Below, piece after piece: positions 269 through 61,002 of a stretch of DNA of 64,000 nucleotides (position 1 is its first letter; each line of letters opens with the position of its first letter). Under the pieces are notes generated by a model that was not told where the DNA came from, ran no database searches, and saw nothing but the letters and a program-made list of their open reading frames with translations. The position numbers and the translations under genes were made by a program. The DNA is taken from the IMG/VR virus record IMGVR_UViG_3300020122_000238, positions 211,301-275,300 of that record; one strand, written 5' to 3'.

Positions 269-543
269 ACCTCGAAATTCACGACAACACGACGGATGAG
301 GGGGGCACCTTGATAGGAGTCGCCAGAAATCTGGACTACATGTACCAGGCGGAGCAGTGGGTGATCGACTCCAAGGACGAGAGGCGGGTCGCTCGCTTCG
401 TCCTGTTCTCGGGCCCTATGACGCCGATTCGCGAATGGCGTATGGTCAACGGAGAGCCGAGCGACGTCCCCATCACGCCGGGGACGGTCGCCGATCCCCG
501 AACGTTCGCCCGCGAGACAACGGACCGAACATGTAGAGGTTGA
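265..543 (+). CDS. hypothetical protein
   Basis: 92-aa ORF coupled to previous gene. Confidence 0.7.
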   Translation: MNLEIHDNTTDEGGTLIGVARNLDYMYQAEQWVIDSKDERRVARFVLFSGPMTPIREWRMVNGEPSDVPITPGTVADPRTFARETTDRTCRG

Positions 544-573
544 TCGGCAGCTCCCTCGGACTGTAGGACGGGC
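540..573 (+). promoter_or_regulatory. class A putative promoter TTGATC-N15-CTGTA-N8-ATG (representative copy)
   Basis: TTGATC 540-545, CTGTA 561-565, ATG 574. The same geometry recurs about 15 times in the window. Confidence 0.75.
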
Positions 574-807
574 ATGAACACTGAAGAAATGGTGGACGCC
601 CTATTCGCCAACAAGCCCGTGAAAGTCAGAGTGCCCGAAACGGGCCTGGCGTTCACGATCGCTCCGAAGAGGGGGTCTTTCGGGATCCTGTTCTTCGGGA
701 TCATCCCCGAGGGAAAGAAGCGCGCTCTGAAAACTCATGGGTACATGCTCATGGGGCGGAATGAGATGTGGGCCTGGGTAAACAGTCTTGAGTCCGTGGA
801 GAACTGA
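574..807 (+). CDS. hypothetical protein
   Basis: 77-aa ORF directly after class A motif. Confidence 0.75.
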   Translation: MNTEEMVDALFANKPVKVRVPETGLAFTIAPKRGSFGILFFGIIPEGKKRALKTHGYMLMGRNEMWAWVNSLESVEN

Positions 808-808
808 C

Positions 809-1168
809 ATGTTGAGCACCATTGAACGAGCCATTGCTCTCAGAACGCACTACCGGGAAATCCTGGTCGCTCGCAACGGACACTGGGGTACTTGCTCTGG
901 GTGCCCTCGCGACGAAGATGGTGTCCCACACCCTGGACGCTGTTCGGAGTATTCGCGATCCGATCATCACATTCCGGCCAGCGAAACGCATCGTGGTGAA
1001 GGCGTAAACACGACCGAAGCCATCGCTGCATTGGCTCGGGTTCTTTACGAGCGCGCTCCGAAGCCTGTGAAGACTGGCCACGCGGAAGCCGACGCGAAAG
1101 CGGAATGGCTGGCTGCGTGGGGCTGTGTGGAAGAAGCCGAGAAGAAATTTTATCCTCCTCGTGGTTGA
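809..1168 (+). CDS. hypothetical protein
   Basis: ORF; ATG 809 follows the previous stop. Confidence 0.65.
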   Translation: MLSTIERAIALRTHYREILVARNGHWGTCSGCPRDEDGVPHPGRCSEYSRSDHHIPASETHRGEGVNTTEAIAALARVLYERAPKPVKTGHAEADAKAEWLAAWGCVEEAEKKFYPPRG

Positions 1169-1198
1169 TCGACAGCCACCCCCGACTGTAGGACTCCC

Positions 1199-1561
1199 AT
1201 GACGACCACCAAGTACGACTTCACCAAGCTCACCGCGGACCTCAAGGCTGGCCTCCTCGTGGCCAAGCAGGTTGCGGCGGCCACCCACGACGGCGGCACC
1301 TGTAACTTCGACGCCCCCAAGTTCCACTTCGATCGTTCACCGTCCCCCAAGGTGCGGGCGGAGTTCGAGAAGGCCGCAACGGAAGCGGGGGTTCCCGGCT
1401 ACTGGACGGGGGACACGTTCGGCCGTCACCAAAACCGTCGCTTCGTCTTCGGTCCCGGGTGCGGCGGGCAGGGCCACTCGCGCACGAAGGCCGCGGAAGC
1501 TCTCAAGGATCACCTCGTCGCTGCGGGCTGGGACGTCAGCATGTACTACCAGGCGGACTGA
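1199..1561 (+). CDS. hypothetical protein
   Basis: 120-aa ORF, strong codon bias, class A motif at 1165-1190. Confidence 0.8.
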   Translation: MTTTKYDFTKLTADLKAGLLVAKQVAAATHDGGTCNFDAPKFHFDRSPSPKVRAEFEKAATEAGVPGYWTGDTFGRHQNRRFVFGPGCGGQGHSRTKAAEALKDHLVAAGWDVSMYYQAD

Positions 1562-1563
1562 TC

Positions 1564-1810
1564 ATGGGACGCCTGGTAGTTACCGTGAGGGGAGAATGCG
1601 AGCACCACAAGCGACGCGGACATCTACTGTGATGTCCGCGTCGCTTGTGGTGCAACGATCCTCCGCGTCGAGATGATAGGGGACTACCCCTCCACGGGCG
1701 CCCACATCTACGTGAAGTGCCAAAAATCTCCCGCCGAGCTGTCCGCGGCTATCGACGCTGCGGACGAGATCCCGCAATATTCAATCAGGACGGAAGTAGA
1801 GCGAAAATGA
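1564..1810 (+). pseudogene. small gene apparently split by a +1 frameshift
   Basis: ATG 1564 gives MGRLVVTVRGEC. The +1 frame continues STTSDADIYCDVRVACG...TEVERK and its stop overlaps the PurA-like ATG (ATGA). Confidence 0.5.
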
Positions 1811-7821: not shown

Positions 7822-7913
7822 GTATGTCCAGAGAGTAGACTTTCACGTTTTCCGTCTAGTACGTGATCCAACATACTAGACGATACCCGTCGAAGTCGGT
7901 GTAACCTCTCCCC

Positions 7914-10108: not shown

Positions 10109-10541
10109 CGGTCTCGACCGTCCAGTAAGGCGGGAGGGGCTCGGCGATCCGAGCGGCCATGGCCTGGACGACGTCCAGGGGAGTTCCGTGCAGGTTCCGA
10201 GCTGCCGCCTTCTCGACAGAGCACTCGATGCGCAGGATGGCCGCCTCGTACCCGAAGGCCGAAGCCGCGAGCATGTAAGGCGCGATCTCGGCAACCGACG
10301 TGTTCGTGTTGTCGACGACGATGAGACTCCAGTCGGCCTCCAACGCAATGAGGAATCTCTTGAAGCACCTTCCGTGCGCTTCCCCGATCTTGGTGGGATC
10401 GAACTCATACTCCCCCGCCTCGTTGACCATGAATTGGTCGGTGGAGACGATGACCGCCTGGTTGACACCCTCGACCAGCTTTTTTGCAATCGTGGACTTC
10501 CCCGATCCCGACAGACCTTGCAAAACGATAACCTTCGGCAT
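10095..10541 (-). CDS. P-loop kinase, AAA_33 / N4BP2-like (polynucleotide-kinase-like)
   Basis: GLSGSGKST, STDQF, IVVDNTN, AARNLHGTP; class A motif upstream on the minus strand. Confidence 0.8.
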   Translation of the reverse strand: MPKVIVLQGLSGSGKSTIAKKLVEGVNQAVIVSTDQFMVNEAGEYEFDPTKIGEAHGRCFKRFLIALEADWSLIVVDNTNTSVAEIAPYMLAASAFGYEAAILRIECSVEKAAARNLHGTPLDVVQAMAARIAEPLPPYWTVETVTND

Positions 10542-10562
10542 GTGTACATCTACACAGGAAGA

Positions 10563-10605
10563 GGGAGGGGGATCAACCATATTTTCCCTGGTTGATCCCC
10601 CTCCC
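10563..10605. promoter_or_regulatory. back-to-back class A promoters forming a 17-bp inverted repeat
   Basis: GGGAGGGGGATCAACCA / TGGTTGATCCCCCTCCC; each TTGATC is 15 nt from (G/T)TGTA upstream of a divergent ATG. Confidence 0.75.
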
Positions 10606-10627
10606 GGTGTTTTTGTAAGACGACCAC

Positions 10628-11953
10628 ATGACGGCCACCCAAATGCACTTTCGGATCGATGGGGACGACTTCACTCGCATCGCCAGGGATTTCTTTCTGG
10701 AGGAGCGCCCTGATGCTGCGTGGCGCTTCATCACGGAAGGCCTGATGGGTGGTGAGCCAGGACAAGCCGAGCACTACGCCAAGCTCATCCTCAACGGAAA
10801 GACCAAGCTCATCGGCAACGAGACCGTGGGGCTGGAGCCGGTCGACGATGACGCGGCTGACTTTCAAAAGCAGGCCCGGTACATCTACGCCGGGCGCATC
10901 CGTAAAGAGGGCCGATGGTGGCGGCCGAGAGCCAAGGTCACGAACTTCGGCCCCGAGGATTGGCCGAAGGGAGCTGTGGCAGGTGATCAAGCCACCACGG
11001 CAGGCAAGGCGCATCTCCACGAGATCGGACGTCAGCGCGTCGCCCACTACGAGCTCAAGGACGAGCGCGTCTTCGATGTCGAAGGGGATTCCCTCATCTT
11101 CGAGCCGTGTGGAGAGCCACCGCATTGGTGGCCGGTTAACCGCACGACCGATGCCGCCCTCAAGGATTTCTTGGCCGCCGGGCGCAAGCTGGAGCTGGAT
11201 GGCTGGTCGCGTCGCTACCAGGTCCGTACCAAGAAGATCACCCCGCCGCCCCTCACGGACGACGAAAAGAGGGCCATTGCTGCCAAGCGGGCCAAGGAAG
11301 ACGAGGAAGATCGGAAGAAGATTGCAGCCTTCTCGATGAAGTGCACCATCATCGGGGCTCAGGTGGTGCTCCAAGCCGGCGAGGACACGTTCGACATGCC
11401 CTTGGAGGACGGGACGACGATCAAGGTCCCGCGGGCTCCGTTCGAAAACTGGGCCCTCCGGAACACGTCGCTGAGCCACCTCGCCCCGGCGTGGCAACCA
11501 ATATCCACGCCGGGGATGAAGATGCCGGGGGACGATGTCTTCCACACGGACTGGGTTCTCGGGGCCCAGCAGACGCTCAAGTCGGCCTATGAGGGCCCGG
11601 TCAAGGATGCCTCCTGGACTGCACGGTTCGATCTGCAACGGAAGCTGGGCAACTGGGAGTGTGGTGTCGTCGTCTCGGGGGAAGATGTGACGGGTGTGGT
11701 CGGCAAGGGCATCCTTGTGCTGTCCGACCTCGACCCCAAGAACCTCGAAGCCGTGATGAAGTCGAAAGCCGTCATCACGCAAGCGGGAGGGAGGCTCGCG
11801 CACCTGGCTCTGGTGGCCATGGAGCACTGCGTCCCGATCCTGCTTGTCCCCGACGCTCTGACCCGATACCCCAAGGGGGCGAAGTTGACCCTCTCGCCGA
11901 AAGACGGGAAGATCCACACGAGGGAGATCGGGGCCATCTACGACTGCGGTTGA
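10628..11953 (+). CDS. protein with C-terminal PEP-utilising enzyme mobile (phospho-His swivel) domain
   Basis: KAVITQAGGRLAHLALVAMEHCVPILLV...GAKLTLSPKDGKI matches the GGxxSHAAIVARE.GIP pattern; N-terminal ~330 aa unknown. Confidence 0.7.
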   Translation: MTATQMHFRIDGDDFTRIARDFFLEERPDAAWRFITEGLMGGEPGQAEHYAKLILNGKTKLIGNETVGLEPVDDDAADFQKQARYIYAGRIRKEGRWWRPRAKVTNFGPEDWPKGAVAGDQATTAGKAHLHEIGRQRVAHYELKDERVFDVEGDSLIFEPCGEPPHWWPVNRTTDAALKDFLAAGRKLELDGWSRRYQVRTKKITPPPLTDDEKRAIAAKRAKEDEEDRKKIAAFSMKCTIIGAQVVLQAGEDTFDMPLEDGTTIKVPRAPFENWALRNTSLSHLAPAWQPISTPGMKMPGDDVFHTDWVLGAQQTLKSAYEGPVKDASWTARFDLQRKLGNWECGVVVSGEDVTGVVGKGILVLSDLDPKNLEAVMKSKAVITQAGGRLAHLALVAMEHCVPILLVPDALTRYPKGAKLTLSPKDGKIHTREIGAIYDCG

Positions 11954-11983
11954 TCCCGGTCGCCCACTTGCTGTAGGTGAAAC

Positions 11984-12223
11984 ATGGACCGTCGAACCAA
12001 CTACGAAGATCGCACCATCCGTCGTCTGACCCGCATCATGTACCCCAAGTACGTGGAGGTCATGAAGAAGGGGGTGGCGCAGGGTGACATCTGGACCCTG
12101 AACGTCTCTGGGAAGAATGTCCTCGCCATCATCGGCGACGGAAACATCACCGTGATGGCGGATGGCGGGGGCTTCCGCCAGGTGGGCACCCCCAAGCGCA
12201 GCAAGTACACCCCCATCTTCTGA
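11984..12223 (+). CDS. hypothetical protein
   Basis: Class A motif at 11950-11975; strong codon bias. Confidence 0.75.
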   Translation: MDRRTNYEDRTIRRLTRIMYPKYVEVMKKGVAQGDIWTLNVSGKNVLAIIGDGNITVMADGGGFRQVGTPKRSKYTPIF

Positions 12224-19203: not shown

Positions 19204-19263
19204 GTTTTTGGGGTACACCGAAGCCAGGGTCTTACTTCCCTGGTTTCGATGTACGGGGGATCC

Positions 19264-19809
19264 TTAGTTCGTCGAGTTGGCGAGGTAACAGGTCCCGCGC
19301 ATCATGAAGAACGGCCCCCCATTGGGGTACACGACCGTCACCGCGCAGGAGTCGCCGTTGTCGCAGAACCCGATCTCCTCGACCTTGCCCGTGCAGAGCT
19401 GAAGAGCCGCCGCCCAGTCCTCGTTGGTGGGCACATCGGGCAGCGGACCATCCGTCTTGTAGATGGTGACCCCGTGCGGGGGAAAGCCGACTGCGTCGAT
19501 CCCATCCTTGCCGTCGCAGCCCTTCACGAAGAGGGAGGGCTTGGCCGGGTCCTTGTCCACGATCTGACAGGTGACCGGGATGCGCTCGACGCACTCACCC
19601 TGGAAGCAGATGCCCGTGGTGGGTCCGCCGCCTTCCAAGGGGCAGACGGTTCCGTTTTCCCCACAGAGGTTCGGTTTGCCGCCCGTACCGGAGCTGGATG
19701 AAGTCGTCGTCGTCGAGCTGGATGCGTCGGACCACGGAGCAGTATCGTCCGTGCCGCAGCCGCAGCCGAAGATGAAACCAGAGAAAATGATCAAAATGGT
19801 GTGCTTCAT
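19264..19809 (-). CDS. Cys-rich lipoprotein, paralog of 18643-19203
   Basis: FIFGC lipobox-like, shared VxGCDG and LCxG..(L/I)GxC..G..C motifs; class A motif upstream. Confidence 0.75.
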   Translation of the reverse strand: MKHTILIIFSGFIFGCGCGTDDTAPWSDASSSTTTTSSSSGTGGKPNLCGENGTVCPLEGGGPTTGICFQGECVERIPVTCQIVDKDPAKPSLFVKGCDGKDGIDAVGFPPHGVTIYKTDGPLPDVPTNEDWAAALQLCTGKVEEIGFCDNGDSCAVTVVYPNGGPFFMMRGTCYLANSTN

Positions 19810-19864
19810 GTCGCCTCTATAGTCCGACCTGGATTCGGATCAACTGGTGTAAGTAAAAAAAGAT

Positions 19865-23121: not shown

Positions 23122-23448
23122 ATGAAGTGGAACGTCGACAAAGCCCTGACCGACTTGGCGAAGTGGGCGAGCGATCGGGACACCTTGGCGGGCATCTCGC
23201 AGGTCTACGTGGACGCTTCGAGGGCGACAGAGGTTGGGGTGCATCCGACCCCGCCCGAGACGAAGAAGGGGGTCGTCTACGTCTGGAAGGTGTACCTGCT
23301 CGCCGGGATGAACATCCACAGTTTCTACGGCCGGACGATTCAGGAGGCCTACCACAAGGCTCGCCGGATGCTTCGGCCCCCGGTCGGCAAGTCGACCAAG
23401 AAGAAGGTTGATCGGTTCAAACGTCGGCGTGTAGGACACGAGCAATGA
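23122..23448 (+). CDS. hypothetical protein
   Basis: ORF from MKWNVDKA. Confidence 0.7.
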   Translation: MKWNVDKALTDLAKWASDRDTLAGISQVYVDASRATEVGVHPTPPETKKGVVYVWKVYLLAGMNIHSFYGRTIQEAYHKARRMLRPPVGKSTKKKVDRFKRRRVGHEQ

Positions 23449-25198: not shown

Positions 25199-26365
25199 TT
25201 ACCAGTCGGAGCCGCCGCCGCTGGAGTCCGAGCTGGACGATGAGTCCGAGCTGGACGATGAGTCCGAGCTGCTTCCTCCGCGGTCCGAGGGCGGAGAAGT
25301 CGAGGAGACCCAGTTCGAGGACCCGCCACCCGCATCGTAGCTCGAAGAACCTCCCGAGCTGGGCTCGTAGCTCGGCGTGGGCGTGTAGCTGTGACGTTGG
25401 ATCGGAACCTCACGCTCGATGTACACGTCCCGCTCGACGACGCGACCCCGATCCCGATGCAAGGCATCTCCGATGAGCATGCCCGTGAGCAGGTCGTTGC
25501 CATTCGAGCCGTAGTGGCCACCGTACCCGCCGTTGTTGTTGATGACCGTCGTGGAACTCGATGCAGCGGCAGCCGCGGGAGCCGGCTGGATGTAGGTGGG
25601 AGCCGCGACCCGGCGAGGAATGGGGGTGCTCGCCACGTTGTAGTCACCTCGGCCGATGCCACCCGTCCTCGCCCTGGCGGCCCCTGCTGAGGCGCTGGCT
25701 GTCGCCGTGGACTTCCGGATACCCTCGGCCCACGCACCTTCCTCGATGTTCCGCGAGCGCATTTCCTGAGCTTCCTCGCGGGTTTCGTTCAACACGGCCT
25801 GGTAGCGGGCCTGATCCGCCTGCGACTTGCGGTACAGGTAGATGGCGAACCAGACGAGCGAGCCGACACCGAGGAGGATGAGAGCCCAGCCACCGACACC
25901 GAGGCCTTCATGCACGACGATCGGGGGCGGGGGAGCGAGAGTCCCGCTGGTCGTCCTGGTCGACACATCGGCACGGGCTCCGATGGCCGTGAGTCCGCCC
26001 ACCCAGTTCTTCTCGCGAAAGGCCGGATTGCCCGCGGCGAAGATGGAGTCCTGATCGAGGGCCTTCACCGGGACGCCGACCCCGAACCGAACGATCGTCG
26101 AGTGATGGTCCGGATCGAGCGCGATGACGATGACGTTGGGCGAGTCCACCCAGGCTTTGGCCGCGCTGACGAGCGCTTCCTTGGCGGGCGAAACCCGGAT
26201 GAGGACATGGGTCTCGAAGGACCAGCTCGACCCTCTGGCCTGGAGGTTCGCGACATCAGCCGACGAAAGCAGATGCGCCTCATCGTTGACGACGACATGT
26301 CCAGCCATGGCGGACAAGGTCCAGAAGAAGACGGCGAATGCGAGGGAAATGCTGTGTTTTTTCAT
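25199..26365 (-). CDS. TPM (DUF477-like) domain membrane protein with Gly/Ser-rich tail
   Basis: Signal peptide, VNDEAHLLS.AD motif, TM, GGSSSYDAGGG...GGGSDW tail. Confidence 0.7.
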   Translation of the reverse strand: MKKHSISLAFAVFFWTLSAMAGHVVVNDEAHLLSSADVANLQARGSSWSFETHVLIRVSPAKEALVSAAKAWVDSPNVIVIALDPDHHSTIVRFGVGVPVKALDQDSIFAAGNPAFREKNWVGGLTAIGARADVSTRTTSGTLAPPPPIVVHEGLGVGGWALILLGVGSLVWFAIYLYRKSQADQARYQAVLNETREEAQEMRSRNIEEGAWAEGIRKSTATASASAGAARARTGGIGRGDYNVASTPIPRRVAAPTYIQPAPAAAAASSSTTVINNNGGYGGHYGSNGNDLLTGMLIGDALHRDRGRVVERDVYIEREVPIQRHSYTPTPSYEPSSGGSSSYDAGGGSSNWVSSTSPPSDRGGSSSDSSSSSDSSSSSDSSGGGSDW

Positions 26366-26379
26366 GTCTTCTCTTCAAT

Positions 26380-27486
26380 CTACACCAGCTTGAGATCAAC
26401 CGAAGCGCGTTCAAGAGAGTCGAACGATGCCCTCAAATCCCCGACACCACCACGGTAGGCGAGAGCGTAAGGGGTAGGGTTGTCCCCAGCGGCATCCGTC
26501 AGTTTTTTGGAAACGGCGTGCCCGATCAGACCTTCCAAGATGATCATGGCACCCACACCCCCATTTCGGATCTTATGCGCGAGGTTGGATGATATCTTGT
26601 GCCCGCCGTTGTCGGTGGGATACCATTCGGCCTCGATGTTGAAGCGCTCCCGAATCGTCCGGAGCTTCTCGTCTTTGACGATGCCCCCGATGATGACGAG
26701 CGGCTTGTTTTGAAGCCGGGCCCTGAGCGTGGGCCATTCCCCAGGGGTGACTGTCTTCGCGAGGATCACATCTTCTTCCCCCTCGAAGGCGGCGAGCTTC
26801 TCCCTGGATTCGCGGGCGATCCTATCCCAGTCGTCGTTATGATCCTTCGCGAGTCCTCGTACGTAGTTGTGGGGGCAGTTGTCCCCACGGACCTTGGAGA
26901 GCAGGGGGATCGAGCGTTCGACCTGCCAGAACAGGTGATGGGTTGAGGGCAGCCGCGTCAACATCTGGCGCACCTCAGCCGTGAGAGCCTGCACGTAGGT
27001 TTGGATCTGAGCAGGGGGTTTCTTCCGAAGATCTGACGTGGCGAAATCCTCGATCTCATCGAGGATCCTCTGTGCACTATGTGCGAGAGGATCTTCCTCG
27101 ACTGCCGGGTCTTCGTGCGGGGGTGCCTGGGGTGGGAGGACCACCTTGACAGGAGGCACCTCTACCACCTTGACAGGGACAGGCGAGGCTTTCAGCTCTT
27201 GCGGGGGAGCTTGAAACGGAACCGCACCGATCAACTCCAGAAGGCTTGTCAACGCATCGCATAGTTTGAGACGCTCTGCATCGATGATTGAAGGCGCTGG
27301 AGTGGACGCTTCCTGTTTGATGGCCGCGAGCATGGCGGCGATCGTTCGTTGTTCCGCATCCTCTCTGTGCGCGACCTCGAAGGAGGTGAGTCGTTCGCGG
27401 AGACATGCGACCATGTCAGATATCGGCCGCACCTCGGCTTCGACGCTGAGAGCACAGGCATTGTATAGTAAATTGGGCAGTTCCAT
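26380..27486 (-). CDS. protein with C-terminal DUF2325-like alpha/beta domain
   Basis: PLVIIGG...EWY...AMIILEGLIGHAVS...GGVGDL; start uncertain. Confidence 0.6.
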   Translation of the reverse strand: MELPNLLYNACALSVEAEVRPISDMVACLRERLTSFEVAHREDAEQRTIAAMLAAIKQEASTPAPSIIDAERLKLCDALTSLLELIGAVPFQAPPQELKASPVPVKVVEVPPVKVVLPPQAPPHEDPAVEEDPLAHSAQRILDEIEDFATSDLRKKPPAQIQTYVQALTAEVRQMLTRLPSTHHLFWQVERSIPLLSKVRGDNCPHNYVRGLAKDHNDDWDRIARESREKLAAFEGEEDVILAKTVTPGEWPTLRARLQNKPLVIIGGIVKDEKLRTIRERFNIEAEWYPTDNGGHKISSNLAHKIRNGGVGAMIILEGLIGHAVSKKLTDAAGDNPTPYALAYRGGVGDLRASFDSLERASVDLKLV

Positions 27487-34999: not shown

Positions 35000-36129
35000 T
35001 TCGCCGTGTTGCGCAGCTCGGTCGAGCTGATGTCCCAGCGGCCCGGGACGTCCTTGAACAGAAAGACAAGGATGTCGACGACATCCTTGTGGGCGTAGAT
35101 GATGTCACTGCCCGTCTTGTACTCACCCTTGACGAGCCGACCGAGCACGTAAAAGCGCGTGCAGTGGGCCGAGAACTCCTCCAGCAAGGGCGCGACTTCG
35201 ATGCCCCACTTGGGGTCGAGCATCGTCGCCAGGGTGTCCGCCCCGAGCACGAAGGCAGCACCCGGGAAGGCCTTCGCCTTGTCGAGGAAGAGCGGGTCGT
35301 TCTCCGACAAGAGGTAGTTACGCCCTCGCATCCCAGCCACCCGTTGCAACAGCTCCGGGACCGTGACAGGCGTCTTGTGGACCGGGTTGATGGTGGTCAT
35401 GTGGACCAACGTCTGGTAGAACCTGTAGGCGAGAAGATGCGCTTCCCGGCCCCCCTTCTCGTGCCCATCATGGAAGGGATTGAAGCTCCCCGGGTAGATA
35501 AGGGTCGTCAGGGGGTTGATGTCCGCAGCCGTTCCGCGCGTCCCATCCGCCTTGAAGTAGGGGTGAGCGAAGAGACGAGCCCGCGCTTTGTCCATGGCCT
35601 CGATGGGCTCGAACTTCACCCCGAGGATGTCGGGGTCGACCGGGAGGCCCATCGCTCGCGAGAGGATGTTCAACCCCATCGAATCGGCGATCATCCCGTC
35701 CACCGTGCGCTGCTCCCAGCCCACTCCTTTGGGGATGACAGCGGAGGCGATGTAGCAGCCCCCATCACCGAAGGCCGCGACGAAGATCCGGTGATCTCCC
35801 CGGTGCTCCCGAGTCGAAGCGACCGAAGCAGCGAGGCCAATCCCGATTGCCTTCGAGCCAGGCTTCACGGCCCGGAGGTACGCGGTCATGGCGAGGTCGA
35901 GCGCGATGTTCTCGTCGCAGTACTTCTCGGGGATGAATCCGAGATGGCGCGCGGTGGCCTCGGGCTCGTACGGGAAGCACGCTTCGATGAAGAAGTTAGA
36001 AATGCCCGGAGGAGCCCAGAGGCGGGACTGGACCCCTGCTCCGGCCCCCGTGGCGATGACGACGACCCGTGGAGCGTCAGCCCCAAGGTCGCGGAGGATT
36101 TCGATGTTGCGTGTGGTGTTGGTGCTCAT
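34996..36129 (-). CDS. CinA-like domain fused to NMN adenylyltransferase-like (HxGH) domain
   Basis: ATGAG...PPGISNFFIEACFPY; YPGSFNPFHDGH; FLDKA...FVLGADT; ISSTELR; class A motif upstream. Confidence 0.75.
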   Translation of the reverse strand: MSTNTTRNIEILRDLGADAPRVVVIATGAGAGVQSRLWAPPGISNFFIEACFPYEPEATARHLGFIPEKYCDENIALDLAMTAYLRAVKPGSKAIGIGLAASVASTREHRGDHRIFVAAFGDGGCYIASAVIPKGVGWEQRTVDGMIADSMGLNILSRAMGLPVDPDILGVKFEPIEAMDKARARLFAHPYFKADGTRGTAADINPLTTLIYPGSFNPFHDGHEKGGREAHLLAYRFYQTLVHMTTINPVHKTPVTVPELLQRVAGMRGRNYLLSENDPLFLDKAKAFPGAAFVLGADTLATMLDPKWGIEVAPLLEEFSAHCTRFYVLGRLVKGEYKTGSDIIYAHKDVVDILVFLFKDVPGRWDISSTELRNTAK

Positions 36130-36283
36130 GTTGTCGGCTCTACAAGACGAGAAAGCCACGGATCAACCAGGATTCTCTTCGGGGTTGTGGGTCCCCACAG
36201 AGATCGGACCAGTGGCGTCGATGTAGCATAGCCTAACCTTCCAGGGCTTCCTTCTCCCGAAGGACATGGTGCTTTGGGGCACC

Positions 36284-39070: not shown

Positions 39071-39078
39071 GAGGACAC

Positions 39079-40796: not shown

Positions 40797-40842
40797 ACCG
40801 CTCAACTACACCAGCTACGAGACAATCAGAGGGAAGCCCCGT

Positions 40843-47298: not shown

Positions 47299-47391
47299 AA
47301 ATCCTCCCTGTACCCTACACCCAAGACAGAAAATCCTGGACGTCGAATTTCTAACACAGCCAAAAAGTCTGGCATGGTGTAAAATAAACCC

Positions 47392-49429: not shown

Positions 49430-49578
49430 GGTTGATCTCCTCCTAGAGATGACTCTCAGGAATAATAAGAGAAACCCCACAGGAAAACCCTTACGCTCTG
49501 GGGACAGCACGATTATTACCGTGTCGGTGGAATACACGCGGCGGTTGATCGGGAGCAGTTGGGGGTGTACTAGGAACC

Positions 49579-49896
49579 ATGCCCAACCATTTCGAAACCT
49601 GCATGTCCGACGCCATCGCTTCCCTGCGGAATCTCAGCCGAGACGCGAAGGAGACCAAACCCATCCTCGCCTGTCAGGCAGGGCTGATCTCCTACATGCT
49701 GATGGCCGCCGACTACCCGTTCTGCATCGCGGCGGCCATTCACTCCGGGCTGGACACCCTGGCGCCGTACGAGGAGTTCATGGTGGAAGGCGACCCGATG
49801 ATCGAACGAGAGCGCCCGACCGAGCTGACCAACATCGCGTGCCACGCTGTCACCGCGCTCCTCCGCCTCGCAGACACCCTCACCAAGATCGATTGA
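49579..49896 (+). CDS. hypothetical protein
   Basis: TTGATC and GGTGTA upstream. Confidence 0.75.
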   Translation: MPNHFETCMSDAIASLRNLSRDAKETKPILACQAGLISYMLMAADYPFCIAAAIHSGLDTLAPYEEFMVEGDPMIERERPTELTNIACHAVTALLRLADTLTKID

Positions 49897-50195: not shown

Positions 50196-50295
50196 TGGGC
50201 AGACCTACCAGGCTGCTCGTGCCCTCATGCTCCTTGCCGACGAACTCATCACGCTCTGAGGTTGATCCCGGCTTCGGCGTACCTGTAGTACCCCC

Positions 50296-50661
50296 ATGAA
50301 GCACTACTGGAAGTTCCCCGCCGACCTACCCGAAGACGCTGCGGAAGGTATCGCAACGTGCCAACACTGTGGCGCTCTAATGAAGGTCGACGTTGGGCCT
50401 CAAGGCGGATCACGGTCGCACTACAGGTGGTCCCTCGACGCTGATTGGGGAGCGAAGAAGCTGGGGAACTGCCCCGGATCGGCGAAGATCAAGATTTCCC
50501 TCGTTCGTATCGGTCAAGCCTACATTAGGGGGATCGTGGAGACCAAGGGGGAGCGCTACGGCTACGAGATGAACAACGTGGCTCGCTGCGATGTGATCAT
50601 CACCCCGTGGGACATTCGAGCCAAGTGGGAGAAGTACCCCACAAATTTCACCAAGCTGTGA
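50296..50661 (+). CDS. hypothetical protein (CxxC)
   Basis: Class A motif at 50262-50287. Confidence 0.7.
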   Translation: MKHYWKFPADLPEDAAEGIATCQHCGALMKVDVGPQGGSRSHYRWSLDADWGAKKLGNCPGSAKIKISLVRIGQAYIRGIVETKGERYGYEMNNVARCDVIITPWDIRAKWEKYPTNFTKL

Positions 50662-50664
50662 GAG

Positions 50665-51266: not shown

Positions 51267-51319
51267 CCTCTTGCCACTACACCAGTTGATCCGCGGCCCC
51301 CCAACCTTGTAGAAAAGCC

Positions 51320-52039
51320 ATGCCTTCCGATGAAGAGTACAGCCGTGAAGATTGGATGCGAGGCGTACCCCCACCTGGAACGGCCCCCGTTGTGCCTCCT
51401 GTGACCACGTACACATACGGAGTTGGCCTTGGGGATGAGAACCAGCTCATTCCGTTCCTGGTTCGTACTGGAAGACCCACACCCGGTGACGTGGTCGAGG
51501 TCCTCGAACAGCACGATATGGAAGGGAAGGCCTCGGAAGCTGCCGCCCAAAGGAACGCGCTCCTCAAGAAGTACCGATGGGCTCTCGCCGAAGTCCGACA
51601 AGACCAAACCGACAAGCACAAGTCCCGGGCAAGCCTGGCTCTGGAGCAACAGCGGTCTGAGGAGGCCCGGCGTCTGGAGGAAGAACGCTGGCAGAAGCAA
51701 CAAGCCGAACGACAGATCCAGCTCAGAGCGGCTCGGAAGCTGGAGATTGGCCGTGTGGCTGCTCACTCGGATGGGCAGTCGATCCACATGGCCATCTTGC
51801 TGGACGTTGAAGACGAGTGCCTTGCGCTCTTCTTGACCTCTAGGCCGGGCTGGGCTCGTCAGTATCGGGAGATGACGGCAGATGAGCGGGCTCTCTGTGG
51901 GATGAGCGCCCGGAACAGGACCACCTATCTGGCCCCGGTCATTCGTCCTTGGGACACGTTCTCGATGACCCCCAAGCAGTTTCCAGAGTCGCGAGTCATC
52001 GAGCTGCGCGAGGAATTCAAGCGAGAATATGCCGACTGA
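51320..52039 (+). CDS. hypothetical coiled-coil protein
   Basis: Class A motif at 51286-51311. Confidence 0.75.
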   Translation: MPSDEEYSREDWMRGVPPPGTAPVVPPVTTYTYGVGLGDENQLIPFLVRTGRPTPGDVVEVLEQHDMEGKASEAAAQRNALLKKYRWALAEVRQDQTDKHKSRASLALEQQRSEEARRLEEERWQKQQAERQIQLRAARKLEIGRVAAHSDGQSIHMAILLDVEDECLALFLTSRPGWARQYREMTADERALCGMSARNRTTYLAPVIRPWDTFSMTPKQFPESRVIELREEFKREYAD

Positions 52040-54793: not shown

Positions 54794-54886
54794 GAGTAAG
54801 TAATACACCGGAGGGCATTTTTAGTCTCCTTGTATCGAACGTCTAACTAGAAGGTACACCTTCAACTTCGTCCCACAGGAGACTAC

Positions 54887-55288
54887 ATGAAAGGTTATGT
54901 ATACCCTTCAAATGCAACACCCCTCACTGATTCGCAATTAGCAGTAGTTGCTCTTGCATCTGACCGGTCACTCAAAGTGACCGTTGTAAGTGGGGGTGGA
55001 GGATCAACAGCAGCCACCACGGTTACCACGAGCGAAGTTACAGTGGATACCAGCTCGGCAGCCCTGAGCGGAGTCTACCCTCTTGGCGTTCAGTTGTACG
55101 CTGACGATACAAACACCGTGACCATCTTTCTTGGAGGAGAAGCGGTTACTACTTCTGGGGCTACCCGAGGGATGCCTTTGGCCCCTGGTAGTTTCTACAC
55201 ACCTCCTGACAGTATACAAGATCTCAGCAAACTCTTTGCTGTAGCTGCCTCAAATTCACAAAAACTTGTCATCCTGGGAGTCGTCTGA
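54887..55288 (+). CDS. possible virion-associated small protein
   Basis: AGGAG Shine-Dalgarno; Thr/Ser/Val-rich; AT-richer codons. Confidence 0.6.
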   Translation: MKGYVYPSNATPLTDSQLAVVALASDRSLKVTVVSGGGGSTAATTVTTSEVTVDTSSAALSGVYPLGVQLYADDTNTVTIFLGGEAVTTSGATRGMPLAPGSFYTPPDSIQDLSKLFAVAASNSQKLVILGVV

Positions 55289-56727: not shown

Positions 56728-56880
56728 AGGGGCGGGAGAGGCACGAACGTTTCCCAGTTGGGGGTTACCATATGTCGGATAGGTCCTTGTCAAGGCGCTC
56801 CCAGGCTGTAGAACCACGCAGCTCTTGGTGTATAGTTTCTTTCGGTTGATCCCGAGCGTGTATTCCCCTGTAGGACCCCC

Positions 56881-57336
56881 ATGGCTCCCCCCGAAACCAG
56901 GAAATGGTGCGCCACTCGCGACCCCCACCCGAACGTGGCGGGCTGCCACGAGATGCACGGCTACTATACGGGAGATCAGTGCCCCGTGTGCTTCGAGGAT
57001 GCCTACGAAGCACAGCTCGCGGGCAACGATGACTACCGAAGGCGGCTCGCTCTGGACGGCTTCAGCTTCCGGCCGACCACCGACTACTGGTACCCCTGTT
57101 TCGATCGGGGCCTGGTTGGAATCTACATCACGGAACCCACCTCGAAAAGTCTCGCCGAACGATCCTCGAAATATGTGACCTATGTGGAAGGGGCCTGCAT
57201 GATCGTCGTCATGGGTGGGGACGACGACTCCTACACCCTCCAAGCGGCCTCCTACGAGGAGGCCGTCGCTATCGTCCGGGGGCTCCCGTTCATCATCTCG
57301 AAGGATGATCTCAAAGCCCGAGGCTTTCGGCCGTGA
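56881..57336 (+). CDS. hypothetical protein
   Basis: Class A motif with 16-nt spacer. Confidence 0.7.
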   Translation: MAPPETRKWCATRDPHPNVAGCHEMHGYYTGDQCPVCFEDAYEAQLAGNDDYRRRLALDGFSFRPTTDYWYPCFDRGLVGIYITEPTSKSLAERSSKYVTYVEGACMIVVMGGDDDSYTLQAASYEEAVAIVRGLPFIISKDDLKARGFRP

Positions 57337-58834: not shown

Positions 58835-58868
58835 GCTTTTGGGGGTCCGTGGTGTAAGGTTGGGGGTC

Positions 58869-59156
58869 ATGTCTGAAACGACCCCCACGAGCTGCACACA
58901 CGACTGGAAGATCCAGCCGGACGCCTCCGACCGTAGGGTGACCCGCTACCAGTGCGCGACATGCCAGCGCTGGGGCTACCGGATGTGGACCGCGAAAGAG
59001 AACGGGCGAATACAGCTCTACACATCGCCGACCCCCGTCGCCTCCTGGTACAAGCTCCCCGAGTCGCCTCCTCGCCCCGCCAAGAAGAGGATCAACCCTG
59101 AGGAAGTCGTCGAGACTTTCGTGCCAGATTTCGAACGTTGGCGAAATCCGAGTTGA
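58869..59156 (+). CDS. hypothetical protein (CxH..CxxC)
   Basis: TTGAGC-N15-GTGTA upstream. Confidence 0.7.
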   Translation: MSETTPTSCTHDWKIQPDASDRRVTRYQCATCQRWGYRMWTAKENGRIQLYTSPTPVASWYKLPESPPRPAKKRINPEEVVETFVPDFERWRNPS

Positions 59157-59186
59157 TCCGCTTCGTCCTCGCCTTGTAGGATACTC

Positions 59187-59474
59187 ATGCCTTCCAAGAC
59201 AACCAAGACCGTCTCTGTTTTATCTGACGTCAAGATCAAAAGCAGAGGTCGGTTCGAGTACGTGTCCAAGCACGGGACCAGAACTAGCGCGCGCTTCGAT
59301 CTTTTTCTCATCCGTGAGGCGTGGGACCAGGACTGCGACTTCGAGGACCTCGCCGATGGTTATGGTGTGGGTAAGGGCACACAGGGCGACTGGAGCGCGA
59401 TCCGTGACTCGTCGCCCGCAGCCATCGACCGGATGTTGCAGAAGGCCATCAATTTTCTCTTTCCGAACGCGTAG
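59187..59474 (+). CDS. hypothetical protein
   Basis: Class A motif. Confidence 0.7.
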   Translation: MPSKTTKTVSVLSDVKIKSRGRFEYVSKHGTRTSARFDLFLIREAWDQDCDFEDLADGYGVGKGTQGDWSAIRDSSPAAIDRMLQKAINFLFPNA

Positions 59475-59508
59475 TTGATCGGCTGTGTCTTATGGCTGTA
59501 GGAGGTTC

Positions 59509-59808
59509 ATGAAAGAACCCCTCAGCAACATCGGCCACGTCTGCGAAGCCCACGCCGCCAAGGGCGGACGGTTCAGCTCGCATGCCCCCGAAAGCTTCGT
59601 CGGCAAGTACATCAAGATGAACTTCGTCGGTAAGACCGACGAAGGCGTCTCCAGGAACGAGCACATGTGGGTGCTTGTTGCGAGCGTGGAGAACGGCCTC
59701 TTGAAGGGCACGCTCAACAACGACCCCGTCTACGATCACGGCGGCCTGGTGTATGGCTCGATCGTCCAGGGGATCACGCTCGCCCAGATCGAGGAAGTCT
59801 GTGATTGA
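59509..59808 (+). CDS. DUF2314-like protein
   Basis: EHMWVLV...LKGTLNNDP; class A motif. Confidence 0.6.
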   Translation: MKEPLSNIGHVCEAHAAKGGRFSSHAPESFVGKYIKMNFVGKTDEGVSRNEHMWVLVASVENGLLKGTLNNDPVYDHGGLVYGSIVQGITLAQIEEVCD

Positions 59809-60362
59809 GCATCAGTGGGTTCTGGTCGACTACCGGGAAATCTGGAGAAAGCAACTCGATCAGGCCCGAGTAATCGAACTAGCCCAAAGCGCACTACCAG
59901 ATCCACGTCTCCTGGCGCGATCTGGAGAATCAGATCAGCAAGGACTCGGGTCTACCGATCAACATGGAGCCCGACTATCAGCGCGACCACGTCTGGACGC
60001 CGGAGCAGAAAACGGCCTTCGTCGAGTACGCCCTCATGGGTGGTGAGTCCTCGATGGACATCACCACCAACTGTCCCGGATGGATGACCGGTTACGAAGG
60101 CCCCTACGAGCTGGTGGACGGCCTTCAGCGCGTGTCTGCGGCCCTTGGCTTCATGCGGAACGAAGTCCCGGCGTTCGGGAAGCTTTACTCGGAGTTCGAT
60201 GGCAAGCTCAGCTACGCCTCGGGGCCATCGTTCAACTGGCGCGTGATGAACCTTGCGACCCGCGCCGAAGTTCTCAAGCTGTACCTCCTCATCAATGCGG
60301 GCGGGGTGGTCCACTCGGCGGAAGAGATCGCCCGCGTCAAAAAGATCCTGGAGACGGCCTAG
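59801..60362 (+). pseudogene. DUF262 (ParB-like) protein, apparent +1 frameshift at ~59882
   Basis: PDYQRDHVWT..Q, ELVDGLQR, INAGGVVH. The in-frame region upstream of ATG 59964 (HYQIHVSWRDLE) has no start and joins the GTG 59801 frame at cta-g-ccc. Confidence 0.7.
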
Positions 60363-60403
60363 TTGGTTGATCCGTGAAGCGCTTGACCTGTATGAAGGGG
60401 ACT

Positions 60404-60652
60404 ATGTATATCGCAATCGAAGCTGGTTGGCTGGTCATCGAGTTCGGCGAATCCTCGATGGGGACGTTCGCTCTCGACGACGTGGAAGGAGCGGCAACGT
60501 TCCTGGCTGCACACAAGGACCGCAACGACGGGGGCGCACTCTACTCGTCGTCGTGTGATGCTCCCGAGCTGTTCGGGGCCTCCCAGGGATGGAAGTTCGA
60601 GCCCCACATGGATCGCGTGATCGCGCGGGCCATGGTCCTCATCGAGGGTTGA
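60404..60652 (+). CDS. hypothetical protein
   Basis: Class A motif at 60367-60392. Confidence 0.7.
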   Translation: MYIAIEAGWLVIEFGESSMGTFALDDVEGAATFLAAHKDRNDGGALYSSSCDAPELFGASQGWKFEPHMDRVIARAMVLIEG

Positions 60653-60747
60653 TCCGTATGCCCCTCAACATCGCCCCGCTGTGGAGGTTGAATTGACGGA
60701 AGAAGTATCGCGGTTGATCCGTACGACCCTCGCGCTGTAGTCCCATC

Positions 60748-61002
60748 ATGAATACCGCCTACCGAAACACCCTCCTCGCGGAATGCCTCGAAGGAGCCCG
60801 CAAGCACATCGCCGAGTTCAACGCAGGCGGAGGGCACATCTCCTTCTCGGGTCTACGCGGAGCTGTGTCCTCCTGGGGTGGCGGCCTGAACGAAGAAGAC
60901 CGTGCCGTCATCACCAACACGCTCGCCAGCGAACTCGTCACCTCTGGCTTTGATCTTCGCGTGAGCGTCATGAACCCCAAGGTCTGGACCCCCAAGAGCT
61001 GA
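60748..61002 (+). CDS. hypothetical protein
   Basis: Class A motif at 60714-60739. Confidence 0.7.
   Translation: MNTAYRNTLLAECLEGARKHIAEFNAGGGHISFSGLRGAVSSWGGGLNEEDRAVITNTLASELVTSGFDLRVSVMNPKVWTPKS

What the first reader, a model, noticed from the sequence alone, without database searches (positions are those of the whole stretch)
540..60748. Class A motif TTGATC-N15-(C/T)TGTA-N8-ATG: bipartite promoter giving leaderless mRNAs
Seen, TTGATC position then start: 540/574, 1165/1199, 10592/10628, 10571(-)/10541, 11950/11984, 19838(-)/19809 (CTATA), 36161(-)/36129, 49545/49579, 50262/50296, 51286/51320, 56846/56881, 59153/59187, 59475/59509, 60367/60404, 60714/60748. The spacer is 15 nt in 13 of these 15, and the ATG is exactly 8 nt downstream in most. 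Few have a Shine-Dalgarno. TTGATC often overlaps the upstream TGA stop (543, 1168, 11953, 59156). Inference: a sigma-type -35/-10 promoter with the start codon at about +1, giving single-gene cassettes typical of early host-takeover genes. The cognate factor could be a host ECF sigma or a phage sigma.
Basis: partly seen in the sequence, partly recalled or inferred. Interest (0 to 1): 0.7.

Follow-up and report, generated by a model that had tools for sequence, protein, structure and literature searches.

The report
Leaderless-mRNA promoter regulon of a huge phage
A two-block DNA motif repeated about 40 times in this uncultivated soil phage fragment (about 95 times in its fuller relative) is almost certainly a sigma-factor promoter placed so close to the ATG that the messenger RNA has no leader, and its sequence closely resembles promoters read by ECF-type sigma factors, one of which the phage's closest relatives encode.

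Summary
All 15 listed sites exist, and the exact pattern occurs 11 times in the window against 0.02 expected.

The window is the end of a 275-kb IMG/VR phage contig. A weight-matrix scan finds about 42 sites there and 94 in a 350-kb relative with 78-93% nucleotide identity.

The consensus is RGTTGATC(C/G)-N14-YTGTAGRA-N4-C-ATG. Several features fit a sigma-type promoter that starts transcription at or within 3 nt of the A of ATG:
- Both blocks stay 93-98% identical between the two phages, while the spacer drops to 79%.
- Sites are co-oriented with genes and sometimes lie back to back.
- The start codon is almost always ATG.
- Sites without ATG at the fixed distance keep a C/A initiator signature there.
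- The GGA in the second block lies too close to the ATG to match the genome's Shine-Dalgarno position.

No transcript data exist, so the start point is inferred.

The motif nearly matches the published ECF11 consensus TGATCC-N16-CGTA. Relatives encode a divergent ECF-like sigma whose own gene carries the motif.

"Single-gene cassettes" and "early" are not supported. Terminators are not enriched, and half the sites use the TGA inside TTGATC as the previous gene's stop codon.

A second, -10-only class (YGGTGTA-N10-ATG) shares the TGTA core.

The parts
538..576 (+). Class A promoter: GGTTGATCG-N14-CTGTAGGA-N5-ATG (ATG at 574). The TGA at 541-543 ends the upstream ORF.
1163..1201 (+). Class A promoter, ATG at 1199. 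The TGA inside TTGATC ends the upstream ORF 788..1168.
10539..10578 (-). Class A promoter with GTGTAGAT as -10 and ATG at 10541. It is the minus-strand half of a back-to-back divergent pair and drives a P-loop kinase-like gene.
10590..10630 (+). Class A promoter with TTGTAAGA as -10 and ATG at 10628. It is the plus-strand half of the divergent pair, with 15 bp between the two -35 hexamers. It drives a 441-aa protein with a PEP-utiliser mobile domain.
11948..11986 (+). Class A promoter, ATG at 11984. The TGA of TTGATC ends ORF 10628..11953.
19807..19845 (-). Class A promoter with CTATAGAG as -10 (one mismatch), ATG at 19809.
23406..23447 (+).
26363..26401 (-). Doubtful class A site: perfect GGTTGATCT but TTGAAGAG in place of the -10. 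ATG at 26365 opens a 388-aa ORF.
   Evidence: score 16.4
36127..36168 (-). Class A promoter, ATG at 36129 (11 nt after TGTA). It drives a 377-aa cytidylyltransferase-like protein.
49543..49581 (+). Hybrid site: TTGATC with a 14-nt spacer and a GGTGTACTA -10 of class B type, ATG at 49579.
50260..50298 (+). Class A promoter, ATG at 50296. In the relative, the sequence downstream of the promoter is replaced by unrelated DNA.
51284..51322 (+). Class A promoter, ATG at 51320. The relative G001 has an ortholog with identical blocks.
56844..56883 (+). Class A promoter with a 16-nt spacer, ATG at 56881.
59151..59189 (+). Class A promoter, ATG at 59187. The TGA of TTGATC ends ORF 58839..59156.
59473..59511 (+). 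Class A promoter, ATG at 59509. The TAG stop of the preceding gene directly abuts TTGATC.
60365..60406 (+). Class A promoter with CTGTATGA as -10, ATG at 60404 (11 nt after TGTA).
60712..60750 (+). Class A promoter, ATG at 60748.

Best explanation
The class A motif is a promoter. The block RGTTGATC(C/G) acts as a -35 element and YTGTAGRA as a -10 element, for a bacterial core RNA polymerase carrying a sigma-70-family factor of the ECF type.

The geometry puts TGTA at -12 to -9, followed by 8 nt, usually ending in C, and then the A of ATG. This places the transcription start on the A of the start codon. In a minority of sites with 9-11 nt it lies 1-3 nt upstream of the ATG.

The resulting mRNA therefore has no leader and no Shine-Dalgarno sequence. 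By the established mechanism for leaderless mRNAs, 70S ribosomes would bind its 5'-terminal AUG directly.

The most likely sigma is phage-encoded. It is a divergent ECF-like protein of about 300 aa with a roughly 120-aa insertion in region 2. It is found in the nearest relatives, in the roughly 88-kb genome segment that this contig lacks. Its gene is itself preceded by a class A site, which would give ECF-style positive autoregulation.

Shown here: the motif, its statistics, its geometry, its conservation, and the existence of the sigma gene with its own class A site.

Inferred: the transcription start, leaderless translation, and which sigma reads the motif.
For: (1) Statistics. There are 11 exact matches against 0.02 expected in the window and 35 sites against 0.1 genome-wide. 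The relative G001 has 94 sites.

(2) Geometry. The first long ORF starts with ATG exactly 8 nt after TGTA at 19 of 36 sites in G000 and 40 of 82 in G001, with no GTG or TTG at that offset. Independent codon-score gene calls place the start there 21 and 35 times.

(3) Purifying selection on the two blocks only. At 29 G000 sites aligned to G001 through their flanks, the -35 block is 97.8% identical and the -10 block 92.9%. The spacer is 79.3%, upstream sequence 87.4% and downstream coding sequence 84.5%.

(4) It acts on DNA rather than RNA.
- One back-to-back divergent pair lies in the window and seven in G001, with only 4-32 bp between the -35 hexamers, leaving no room for another promoter.
- The motif region shows no consistent RNA fold (mean z -0.22).

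(5) Initiator signature. Sites without ATG at +9 still have C at TGTA+8 (21 of 39) and A at TGTA+9 (18 of 39) in G001. Background frequencies are about 0.29 for C and 0.21 for A.

(6) It is not a Shine-Dalgarno sequence.
- In other genes GGAG/GAGG starts at -12 to -9, whereas the GGA of class A sits at -8 to -6.
- Sites with long leaders carry a normal AGGAG/GAGGA before the ATG.
- ATG is the start in 27 of 28 and 50 of 51 class A genes, against 77-79% of other genes.

(7) ECF likeness.
- The published ECF11 consensus is TGATCC-N16-CGTA (PMC5507510). Here it is TGATC(C/G)-N15-TGTA.
- ECF sigmas need near-consensus promoters and commonly autoregulate, and predicted leaderless ECF promoters start with A (Todor et al.).

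(8) Phage sigma.
- The 302-aa protein of G001 and all 8 homologs hit TIGR02937, the sigma-70/ECF superfamily model (best E 3.4e-7).
- It also has a weak Sigma70_r2 match at residues 22-54.
- JGI names it a sigma-24 family protein.
- Its gene has a class A site in G001 and in two more distant relatives whose sigmas are 52% and 60% identical.

(9) No other polymerase or promoter type is evident.
- There is no DxDGD catalytic motif of a multisubunit RNA polymerase in any ORF over 150 aa of G000 or G001.
- TATAAT occurs only 3 times in the 275-kb contig.
- Sigma-70 consensus promoters are not enriched (4 against 5.2 expected).
Against: - No transcript 5' ends are available. Only two soil DNA runs hold traces of the sequence, and no RNA run was listed.
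- The sigma gene is not on the window's own contig, which ends before that region. Its presence in this phage is inferred from a relative with 78-93% nucleotide identity.
- The sigma assignment rests on sub-threshold profile hits. The AlphaFold model is poor (pLDDT 57), and Foldseek gave no significant match, although sigma factors recur among the weak hits.
- The spacer is one base shorter than in ECF11 promoters, and the -10 is TGTA rather than CGTA.
- If both promoter classes need phage sigmas, it is unexplained what transcribes the sigma gene first.
- One class A site sits only 4 nt upstream of a tRNA 5' end. The predicted start would truncate that tRNA.
Confidence: 0.7

Rival explanations
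1. Class A is a promoter giving leaderless mRNAs, but a host sigma reads it. The candidate is a host ECF11-type (RpoE/ChrR-like) sigma, or an unusual housekeeping sigma of an unknown host. The phage sigma-like proteins would serve other promoters, for example the -10-only class B.
For: - The -35 is identical to the ECF11 consensus TGATCC, and the -10 differs by one base.
- Many small unknown genes behind strong, uniform promoters recall host-transcribed early genes of T4-type phages (general knowledge).
- The phage sigma gene itself sits behind a class A site, as expected if the host makes it first.
Against: - An ECF sigma is normally sequestered by its anti-sigma factor and controls few genes, whereas this phage has about 95 such promoters.
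- A scan of 185,579 species genomes for the motif with ATG gave only scattered single hits in the rows shown.
- The companion TGTA motif is not enriched in the sampled genomes: 3-5 per Mb in 26 Planctomycetota and at most 2 per Mb in 16 Actinomycetota, against 76-156 per Mb in the phage.
- G at -11 and the lack of T at -7 are incompatible with known housekeeping -10 recognition (general knowledge).
- The host is unknown, so this test is weak.
Confidence: 0.2
2. TTGATC is not read by sigma region 4. Instead it is the box of a phage activator that replaces -35 recognition, as in T4 MotA/AsiA sigma appropriation, while a sigma reads only TGTA. The 236-aa phage protein with two region-4-like helix-turn-helix units would be the candidate.
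For: - Classes A and B share the TGTA core and differ in the upstream element.
- The 236-aa protein has a strong Sigma70_r4 domain (E 2.5e-13) without region 2, plus a second weak copy.
- That protein is 100% identical between G000 and G001, although the genomes differ by about 10%.
Against: - The distance from TGTA to ATG differs by 2 nt between the classes, and the bases flanking TGTA differ (GRA after it in A, YGG before it in B). The -10 elements are therefore not simply the same.
- The 16-nt spacing between ATC and TGT is exactly that of sigma-read ECF promoters.
- No direct test was possible; the complex prediction was not run by the tool.
Confidence: 0.1
3. The motif works on RNA as a translation signal. 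TAGGA would act as a short Shine-Dalgarno sequence and the upstream block as a re-initiation or coupling element after the UGA embedded in it, on polycistronic transcripts.
For: - The TGA of TTGATC is the stop of the upstream frame at about half of the sites.
- AGGA or GAG occurs at -9 to -6.
- Terminators are not enriched, so read-through transcripts containing the motif probably exist.
Against: - The invariant bases are TGTA, not the purine run.
- The GGA lies 3-4 nt closer to the ATG than the genome's Shine-Dalgarno peak.
- Back-to-back divergent pairs have no upstream same-strand transcript source.
- A/B-type sites also precede tRNA genes.
- There is no conserved RNA structure.
- A secondary role for the purines on read-through transcripts is not excluded.
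Confidence: 0.05

Closest known systems
ECF11-type (RpoE/ChrR) sigma promoters, consensus TGATCC-N16-CGTA (Pseudomonas syringae PSPTO_1043; PMC5507510)
   Same: - It is bipartite, with a near-identical -35 (TGATCC) and a four-base -10 of the type YGTA.
- The non-conserved spacer has a rigid length.
- The sigma gene carries its own promoter type (autoregulation).
   Different: - The spacer is 15 rather than 16.
- The -10 is TGTA followed by GRA.
- There are about 95 promoters in one phage genome rather than a small stress regulon.
- The start codon is fused to +1.
- The candidate sigma matches only the sigma-70/ECF superfamily model, carries a roughly 120-aa insertion, and has no recognisable anti-sigma neighbour.
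Leaderless genes with the -10 element adjacent to the ORF in Deinococcus-Thermus and Actinobacteria (PMC12340547, PMC3898074, PMC3160421)
   Same: - The -10 element ends 6-7 nt before an ATG.
- There is no Shine-Dalgarno sequence.
- A large share of genes is affected: here 22-24% of called genes have TGTA at -16 to -10.
   Different: In those organisms the element is the housekeeping TANNNT read by the primary sigma. Here it is TGTA, with G where the essential A-11 would be, so a different sigma specificity is implied. The system is also viral.
Thermus phages phiYS40 and P23-45: -10-only (extended -10) phage promoters; for phiYS40, leaderless transcripts as I recall them from Sevostyanova et al. 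2007 (not held in the library, so from memory); P23-45 from PMC4124052
   Same: - A large phage whose genes are expressed from promoters lying directly on the start codon.
- Promoter classes with and without a -35 element coexist.
   Different: Those promoters are read by the host primary sigma and have TATAAT-like -10 elements. Switching there relies on small polymerase-binding proteins rather than a phage sigma.
Phage-encoded sigma factors with -10-only promoters (T4 gp55, TATAAATA; phiEco32 gp36, whose element I recall as containing TGTA; both from memory)
   Same: A phage sigma redirects host core polymerase to a phage-specific short element. This resembles class B (YGGTGTA), the companion of class A.
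   Different: Class A has a full -35 element. The proteins show no detectable sequence relationship to these sigmas.

Membership tests
Sigma-70-family bipartite (-35/-10) promoter | Two short conserved blocks separated by a non-conserved spacer of fixed length | tested here: met
   The information content lies in RGTTGATC and YTGTAGRA only. The spacer is 15 nt in 31 of 34 exact sites.
Sigma-70-family bipartite (-35/-10) promoter | Upstream of, and co-oriented with, genes; mostly outside coding sequence | tested here: met
   In G000, 30 of 42 sites are fully intergenic and 8 more overlap a gene by 10 nt or less. A co-directional ORF follows nearly all of them.
Sigma-70-family bipartite (-35/-10) promoter | Blocks under selection, spacer free to vary | tested here: met
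   Identity between G000 and G001 is 97.8% and 92.9% for the blocks against 79.3% for the spacer.
Sigma-70-family bipartite (-35/-10) promoter | Transcripts start 6-9 nt downstream of the -10 block | not testable with these tools
   No RNA run was listed. The only indirect evidence is the C-1/A+1 signature at TGTA+8/+9.
ECF11 (RpoE/ChrR) regulon promoter | -35 element TGATCC | tested here: met
   TGATC is invariant. The next base is C in 17 and G in 10 of 31 sites. Consensus taken from PMC5507510.
ECF11 (RpoE/ChrR) regulon promoter | -10 element CGTA at a 16-nt spacing | tested here: not met
   The -10 is TGTA (T in 31 of 31 sites), and the spacing from TGATCS is 15 nt.
ECF11 (RpoE/ChrR) regulon promoter | Read by an ECF11-group sigma co-encoded with a ChrR-type anti-sigma factor | tested here: not met
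   The candidate phage sigma hits only the superfamily model TIGR02937. The neighbouring 265/285-aa ORF has no family match and is not a paralog.
ECF-type autoregulated sigma | The sigma gene is preceded by its own promoter type | tested here: met
   A class A site with ATG at the fixed distance precedes the sigma gene in G001, L252 and L256. Whether that sigma reads it is untested.
Sigma-70 family protein (candidate 302-aa factor) | Regions 2 and 4 recognisable | tested here: inconclusive
   All 9 family members hit TIGR02937 below its cut-off (best E 3.4e-7), and Pfam region 2 gives E 0.035. There is no match to sequences of solved structures. The model has pLDDT 57 and Foldseek E-values above 0.9.
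Leaderless mRNA genes | -10 element ends 6-7 nt before the start codon, with no Shine-Dalgarno sequence | tested here: met
   The modal distance is 6 nt between TGTAGR and ATG. There is no room for a Shine-Dalgarno sequence, and the GGA is displaced relative to the genome's peak.
Leaderless mRNA genes | Strong preference for AUG as start codon | tested here: met
   All 59 ORF starts at the modal offset are ATG. ATG is the start in 27 of 28 and 50 of 51 class A genes, against 77-79% of other genes.
Leaderless mRNA genes | Mapped 5' end on the A of AUG | not testable with these tools
   No transcriptome is available.
Promoter-bounded mobile gene cassettes (T4 PeSL-like) | Indel or replacement boundaries between related genomes coincide with the promoter repeats | tested here: inconclusive
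   Of 57 breakpoints in the small-gene region, 5 lie within 40 nt of a class A site against 2.0 +/- 1.4 expected. Clear examples are at window 50262 and 59179-59512.

The most novel reading that the evidence does not exclude
A clade of uncultivated soil and rhizosphere phages of about 350 kb may run a large share of its gene expression through its own ECF-like sigma factor(s) and leaderless mRNAs.

About 95 ECF-like promoters and about 75 to 140 -10-only TGTA promoters are fused to start codons. In half of the class A sites the -35 hexamer also supplies the stop codon of the preceding gene.

This would make both transcription initiation and translation initiation independent of the host's primary sigma and of Shine-Dalgarno-led 30S initiation. 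Such a design would let the phage shut those host pathways down.
Probability: 0.3. Interest if true: 0.8.

Novelty: new variant of a known kind. Interest (0 to 1): 0.62.

Why it matters
Phage transcription programmes are known in detail for only a handful of cultivated phages. For huge environmental phages they are essentially unknown.

This case offers a sequence-readable regulon of about 95 near-identical promoters with a candidate cognate sigma. It can be tested directly with synthetic DNA, with no need to culture the phage or find its host.

If confirmed:
- It would be an unusually large ECF-type regulon and would extend leaderless expression to a whole viral genome.
- It would supply an orthogonal sigma-promoter pair with built-in leaderless translation.
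- It would improve gene-start annotation for this phage clade, because the motif fixes the start codon of about a quarter of the genes when class B is included.

Tried and rejected
- Megablast of 20 kb of the window against cultivated-phage records found no match. The nearest record by DNA polymerase is an unannotated 485-kb metagenomic phage at 35% identity. It has neither the motif nor the sigma family.
- RNA evidence: only two soil DNA runs hold 7-9% of the sampled words, and no RNA run was listed.
- A phage RNA polymerase was looked for and not found. There is no DxDGD motif, and the large proteins have no Pfam or PHROG polymerase hits. A T7-like single-subunit polymerase was not searched for specifically.
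- A host regulon was sought by scanning 185,579 species genomes. The rows shown held scattered single hits, apart from one 3.7-kb, 68%-GC contig with two hits that has no similarity to the phage. The list was truncated.
- The class B pattern showed no phage-like density in samples of Planctomycetota and Actinomycetota. The Actinomycetota sample included one unpublished genome (G034).
- Host identification failed.
- The structure of the sigma candidate came out at low confidence and gave no significant fold match.
- The sigma-DNA complex prediction was not folded by the tool and is not evidence either way.
- The ORF downstream of the sigma gene was tested as a paralogous sigma and rejected.
- An RNA structure in the motif was rejected.
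- Depletion or enrichment of GATC as a sign of methylation interplay was not seen (observed/expected 0.95).
- A T4-late-like TATAAATA motif is not recurrent.
- tRNA genes were examined as translation-independent targets. A/B-type sites precede 3-4 tRNAs, but the distances (4-16 nt, one at 55 nt) are inconsistent, so this gives only weak support.

Full report
**Context**

The window is the last 64 kb (211,301-275,300) of a single 275,300-bp IMG/VR virus record with 58% G+C. The record is classed linear and estimated about 58% complete. It has no near relative among deposited phage genomes.

Its gene content marks it as a huge tailed phage:
- NAD-dependent ligase, RecD2-like and UvrD-like helicases, RecA and a family A DNA polymerase;
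- an intein-bearing protein;
- baseplate J and many very large proteins without family matches.

**Observation**

The exact pattern TTGATC-N15-YTGTA occurs 11 times in the window against 0.02 expected.

The aligned exact sites give the consensus RGTTGATC(C/G)-N14-YTGTAGRA-N4-C-ATG, with no information in the spacer.

A weight matrix made from the two blocks alone, without the ATG, finds:
- 35 sites at score 20 or more in the contig against 0.1 in shuffles;
- 42 sites at score 16 or more against 0.8.

Of the sites at score 12 or more, about 30 have an ATG-initiated ORF starting exactly 6 nt after the hexamer TGTAGR. The scan adds two unlisted window sites: 23408(+), and a weak one at 26399(-). 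It also shows that 49545 is a hybrid with a GGTGTA -10.

**Relatives**

Scanning IMG/VR for the motif with its ATG returned three huge contigs with many hits each, plus scattered single hits. The three belong to one phage, represented here by G001 (350,469 bp).

G001 is collinear with the window's contig at 78-93% nucleotide identity. The window's contig spans the two ends of G001. G001 is therefore probably circularly permuted and near complete. The window's contig lacks roughly 88 kb of what G001 holds (G001 about 235.8-324 kb).

G001 carries 94 class A sites with the same geometry.

**Why it is a promoter**

1. *Selection.* For 29 sites of the window's genome whose flanks align to G001 irrespective of motif score, the -35 block is 97.8% identical and the -10 block 92.9%. 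The spacer is 79.3%, the upstream sequence 87.4% and the downstream coding sequence 84.5%.

2. *Position.* Sites are co-oriented with the following gene and mostly intergenic.

3. *Divergent pairs.* One pair in the window (10576- / 10592+) and seven in G001 lie back to back with only 4-32 bp between the -35 hexamers. No other promoter could fit upstream, so the element must act on DNA.

4. *No RNA fold.* The region has no consistent RNA structure (mean z -0.22 over 100 sites).

5. *No competing signals.* Canonical sigma-70 consensus promoters and intrinsic terminators are not enriched in window 46-64 kb (4 against 5.2 and 15 against 14.7). TATAAT occurs three times in the whole 275-kb contig.

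**Why the mRNAs are probably leaderless**

If the A of ATG is +1, TGTAGR occupies -12 to -7. This is the standard position of a -10 hexamer (established promoter geometry).

- The ORF start at TGTA+9 is always ATG: 19 of 19 in this genome and 40 of 40 in G001. A second mode lies at +12, usually ACC-ATG.
- Sites without ATG at +9 keep C at +8 and A at +9: 21 of 39 and 18 of 39 in G001, against backgrounds of about 0.29 and 0.21. That is the pyrimidine/purine initiator signature.
- ATG is used by 27 of 28 and 50 of 51 class A genes, against 77-79% of the other called genes. This fits the known need of leaderless translation for a 5' AUG.
- In other genes the Shine-Dalgarno core GGAG/GAGG starts at -12 to -9. 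The GGA of class A sits at -8 to -6.
- The few class A sites with leaders of 20-48 nt carry a normal AGGAG or GAGGA before their ATG.

None of this replaces 5'-end mapping, which could not be done.

**A second class**

Upstream regions without class A are enriched for GGTGTA. The consensus is Y-GGTGTA-N10-ATG, with no conserved -35.

There are 136 such sites with ORFs of 45 aa or more in the two genomes. A looser scan allowing 8-12 nt to the ATG lists 26 in the window.

Class A has TGTA at -12 from the ATG, and class B has it at -14. The bases flanking TGTA also differ between the classes.

Together, 73 of 337 called genes in G000 and 111 of 468 in G001 have TGTA at -16 to -10. About 1.5% would be expected by chance.

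Class B drives larger genes such as the ligase and several proteins of 500-1,100 aa. Class A drives mostly small genes of unknown function. The two classes are interspersed.

**Which factor**

No multisubunit polymerase signature was found, so host core polymerase with a sigma is the likely enzyme.

The class A blocks resemble the ECF11 consensus TGATCC-N16-CGTA, determined by ChIP and expression analysis in Pseudomonas syringae (PMC5507510). The differences are a spacer one base shorter and T for C in the -10. ECF sigmas are known to need near-consensus promoters and to autoregulate (Todor et al.).

Two sigma-like phage genes were found.

*The 236-aa protein* (contig 23,072-23,782, outside the window):
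- It has a strong Sigma70_r4 domain and a second weak one, but no region 2.
- It is 100% identical in G001.

*The 302-aa protein* lies in the part of G001 missing from this contig.
- It has a weak region 2 match at residues 22-54 and a TIGR02937 match at residues 181-300.
- All nine members of its family hit TIGR02937, with best E 3.4e-7.
- JGI names it a sigma-24 family protein.
- Its structure model is poor and gives no significant fold match.
- Its gene is preceded by a class A site in G001 and in two more distant phages, whose sigmas are 52% and 60% identical and whose motif reads ATTGATCG or GTTGATCG-N15-YTGTAG.

Two comparisons suggest that this sigma family and class A occur together, though the sample is small:
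- A phage whose sigma is only 33% identical shows class B but no class A in the 21 kb available.
- A 485-kb phage related only through its DNA polymerase has neither the sigma family nor class A.

A host-sigma reading cannot be excluded, because the host is unknown. The scans of bacterial genomes gave no sign of a host regulon or of a host-wide TGTA promoter, but they were truncated or small samples.

- "Single-gene cassettes" is not supported. The window has 17 sites for about 100 genes, and terminators are not enriched.
- At about half of the sites the TGA inside TTGATC is the stop codon of the preceding frame. Units are therefore packed 30 nt apart, and read-through is likely.
- "Early" and "host takeover" remain conjecture. 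The driven genes with any annotation are a P-loop kinase-like protein, a protein with a PEP-utiliser mobile domain, a cytidylyltransferase-like protein and a DUF2314 protein.

**Comparison with what is known**

Leaderless genes with the -10 element against the ORF are well described in Deinococcus-Thermus and Actinobacteria (PMC12340547; PMC3898074 and PMC3160421, listed). As I recall, they are also described in Thermus phage phiYS40; that paper is not held, so this is from memory. There the element is the housekeeping TANNNT.

ECF promoters with TGATCC are known.

What is new here is the combination:
- a viral regulon of about 95 near-consensus ECF-like promoters fused to start codons;
- a companion -10-only class with the same TGTA core;
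- a -35 hexamer doubling as a stop codon;
- a phage-specific ECF-like sigma carrying an insertion.

I file it as a new variant of known kinds. It works like an ECF-type promoter giving leaderless mRNA. It does not meet the defining spacing, -10 and sigma-group criteria for membership of ECF11.

**Confidence**

| Claim | Confidence |
|---|---|
| It is a promoter | about 0.9 |
| Transcription starts at or within 3 nt of the ATG | about 0.75 |
| An ECF-type sigma reads it | about 0.6 |
| That sigma is the phage 302-aa family | about 0.45 |

Noticed in passing
Window, for example 7897-7916(+), 19201-19220(-), 29798-29817(+), 30975-30994(-) with 30995-31014(+), 37876-37895(-), 47375-47394(+), 54791-54810(-); 26 sites in all: A second promoter-like class, Y-GGTGTA-N10-ATG, has no -35 element and is also fused to start codons. 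There are 136 sites with ORFs in the two genomes. It shares the TGTA core with class A but lies 2 nt further from the ATG, and it drives larger genes (ligase, polymerase-region and some structural genes).
   Followed up: partly
G000 contig 23,072-23,782 (L004:12572-13279, + strand), outside the window: A 236-aa protein has a strong Sigma70 region 4 domain at residues 46-120, a second weak region-4-like helix-turn-helix near residues 165-190, and no region 2. It is 100% identical in the relative G001, although the genomes differ by about 10%.
   Followed up: partly
G001 about 242,600-265,700 (L119, L120), in the segment missing from the window's contig: An array of about 40 tRNA genes plus a tmRNA (tag peptide ANDNALVPMQMAA; Rfam RF00023, 121.6 bits). 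A few class A/B-type sites lie directly upstream of tRNA genes, and one would truncate the tRNA if the predicted start holds.
   Followed up: partly
Window 50262-50662 and 59179-59512 (also 54794-56812): Blocks with no counterpart in the relative G001 begin or end at conserved class A promoters. Whole genes appear to be exchanged between fixed promoter joints. The genome-wide enrichment of breakpoints at promoters is weak (5 against 2.0 expected).
   Followed up: partly
Window 22,457-44,300 against G001 ends (G001 1-1,399 and 345,388-350,469): The window's contig runs across the two ends of the 350-kb relative, so that relative is probably circularly permuted and nearly complete despite a 73% completeness estimate. 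The junction region holds about 15 kb (window 23,804-35,003 and 36,868-41,275) that is absent from the relative.
   Followed up: partly
G000 contig 29,680-33,072 (L005:8680-12069): An 1,130-aa protein is interrupted by an intein with a LAGLIDADG homing endonuclease domain (Pfam PF14890 and PF14528). The host protein was not identified.
   Followed up: no
L257 (G001 270,163-291,071) and L252, L256: The ECF-like sigma gene lies in a conserved block followed by an unknown 265-aa gene, N6/N4 DNA methyltransferases and a 1,330-aa DUF6094 protein. The -35 element contains GATC, so an interplay with adenine methylation is conceivable, but GATC frequency is ordinary (observed/expected 0.95).
   Followed up: partly
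Whole contig: Shine-Dalgarno use is low overall: only 26-28% of the non-class-A gene calls have GGAG/GAGG at -20 to -4. CTAG is strongly depleted (observed/expected 0.4-0.5).
   Followed up: no
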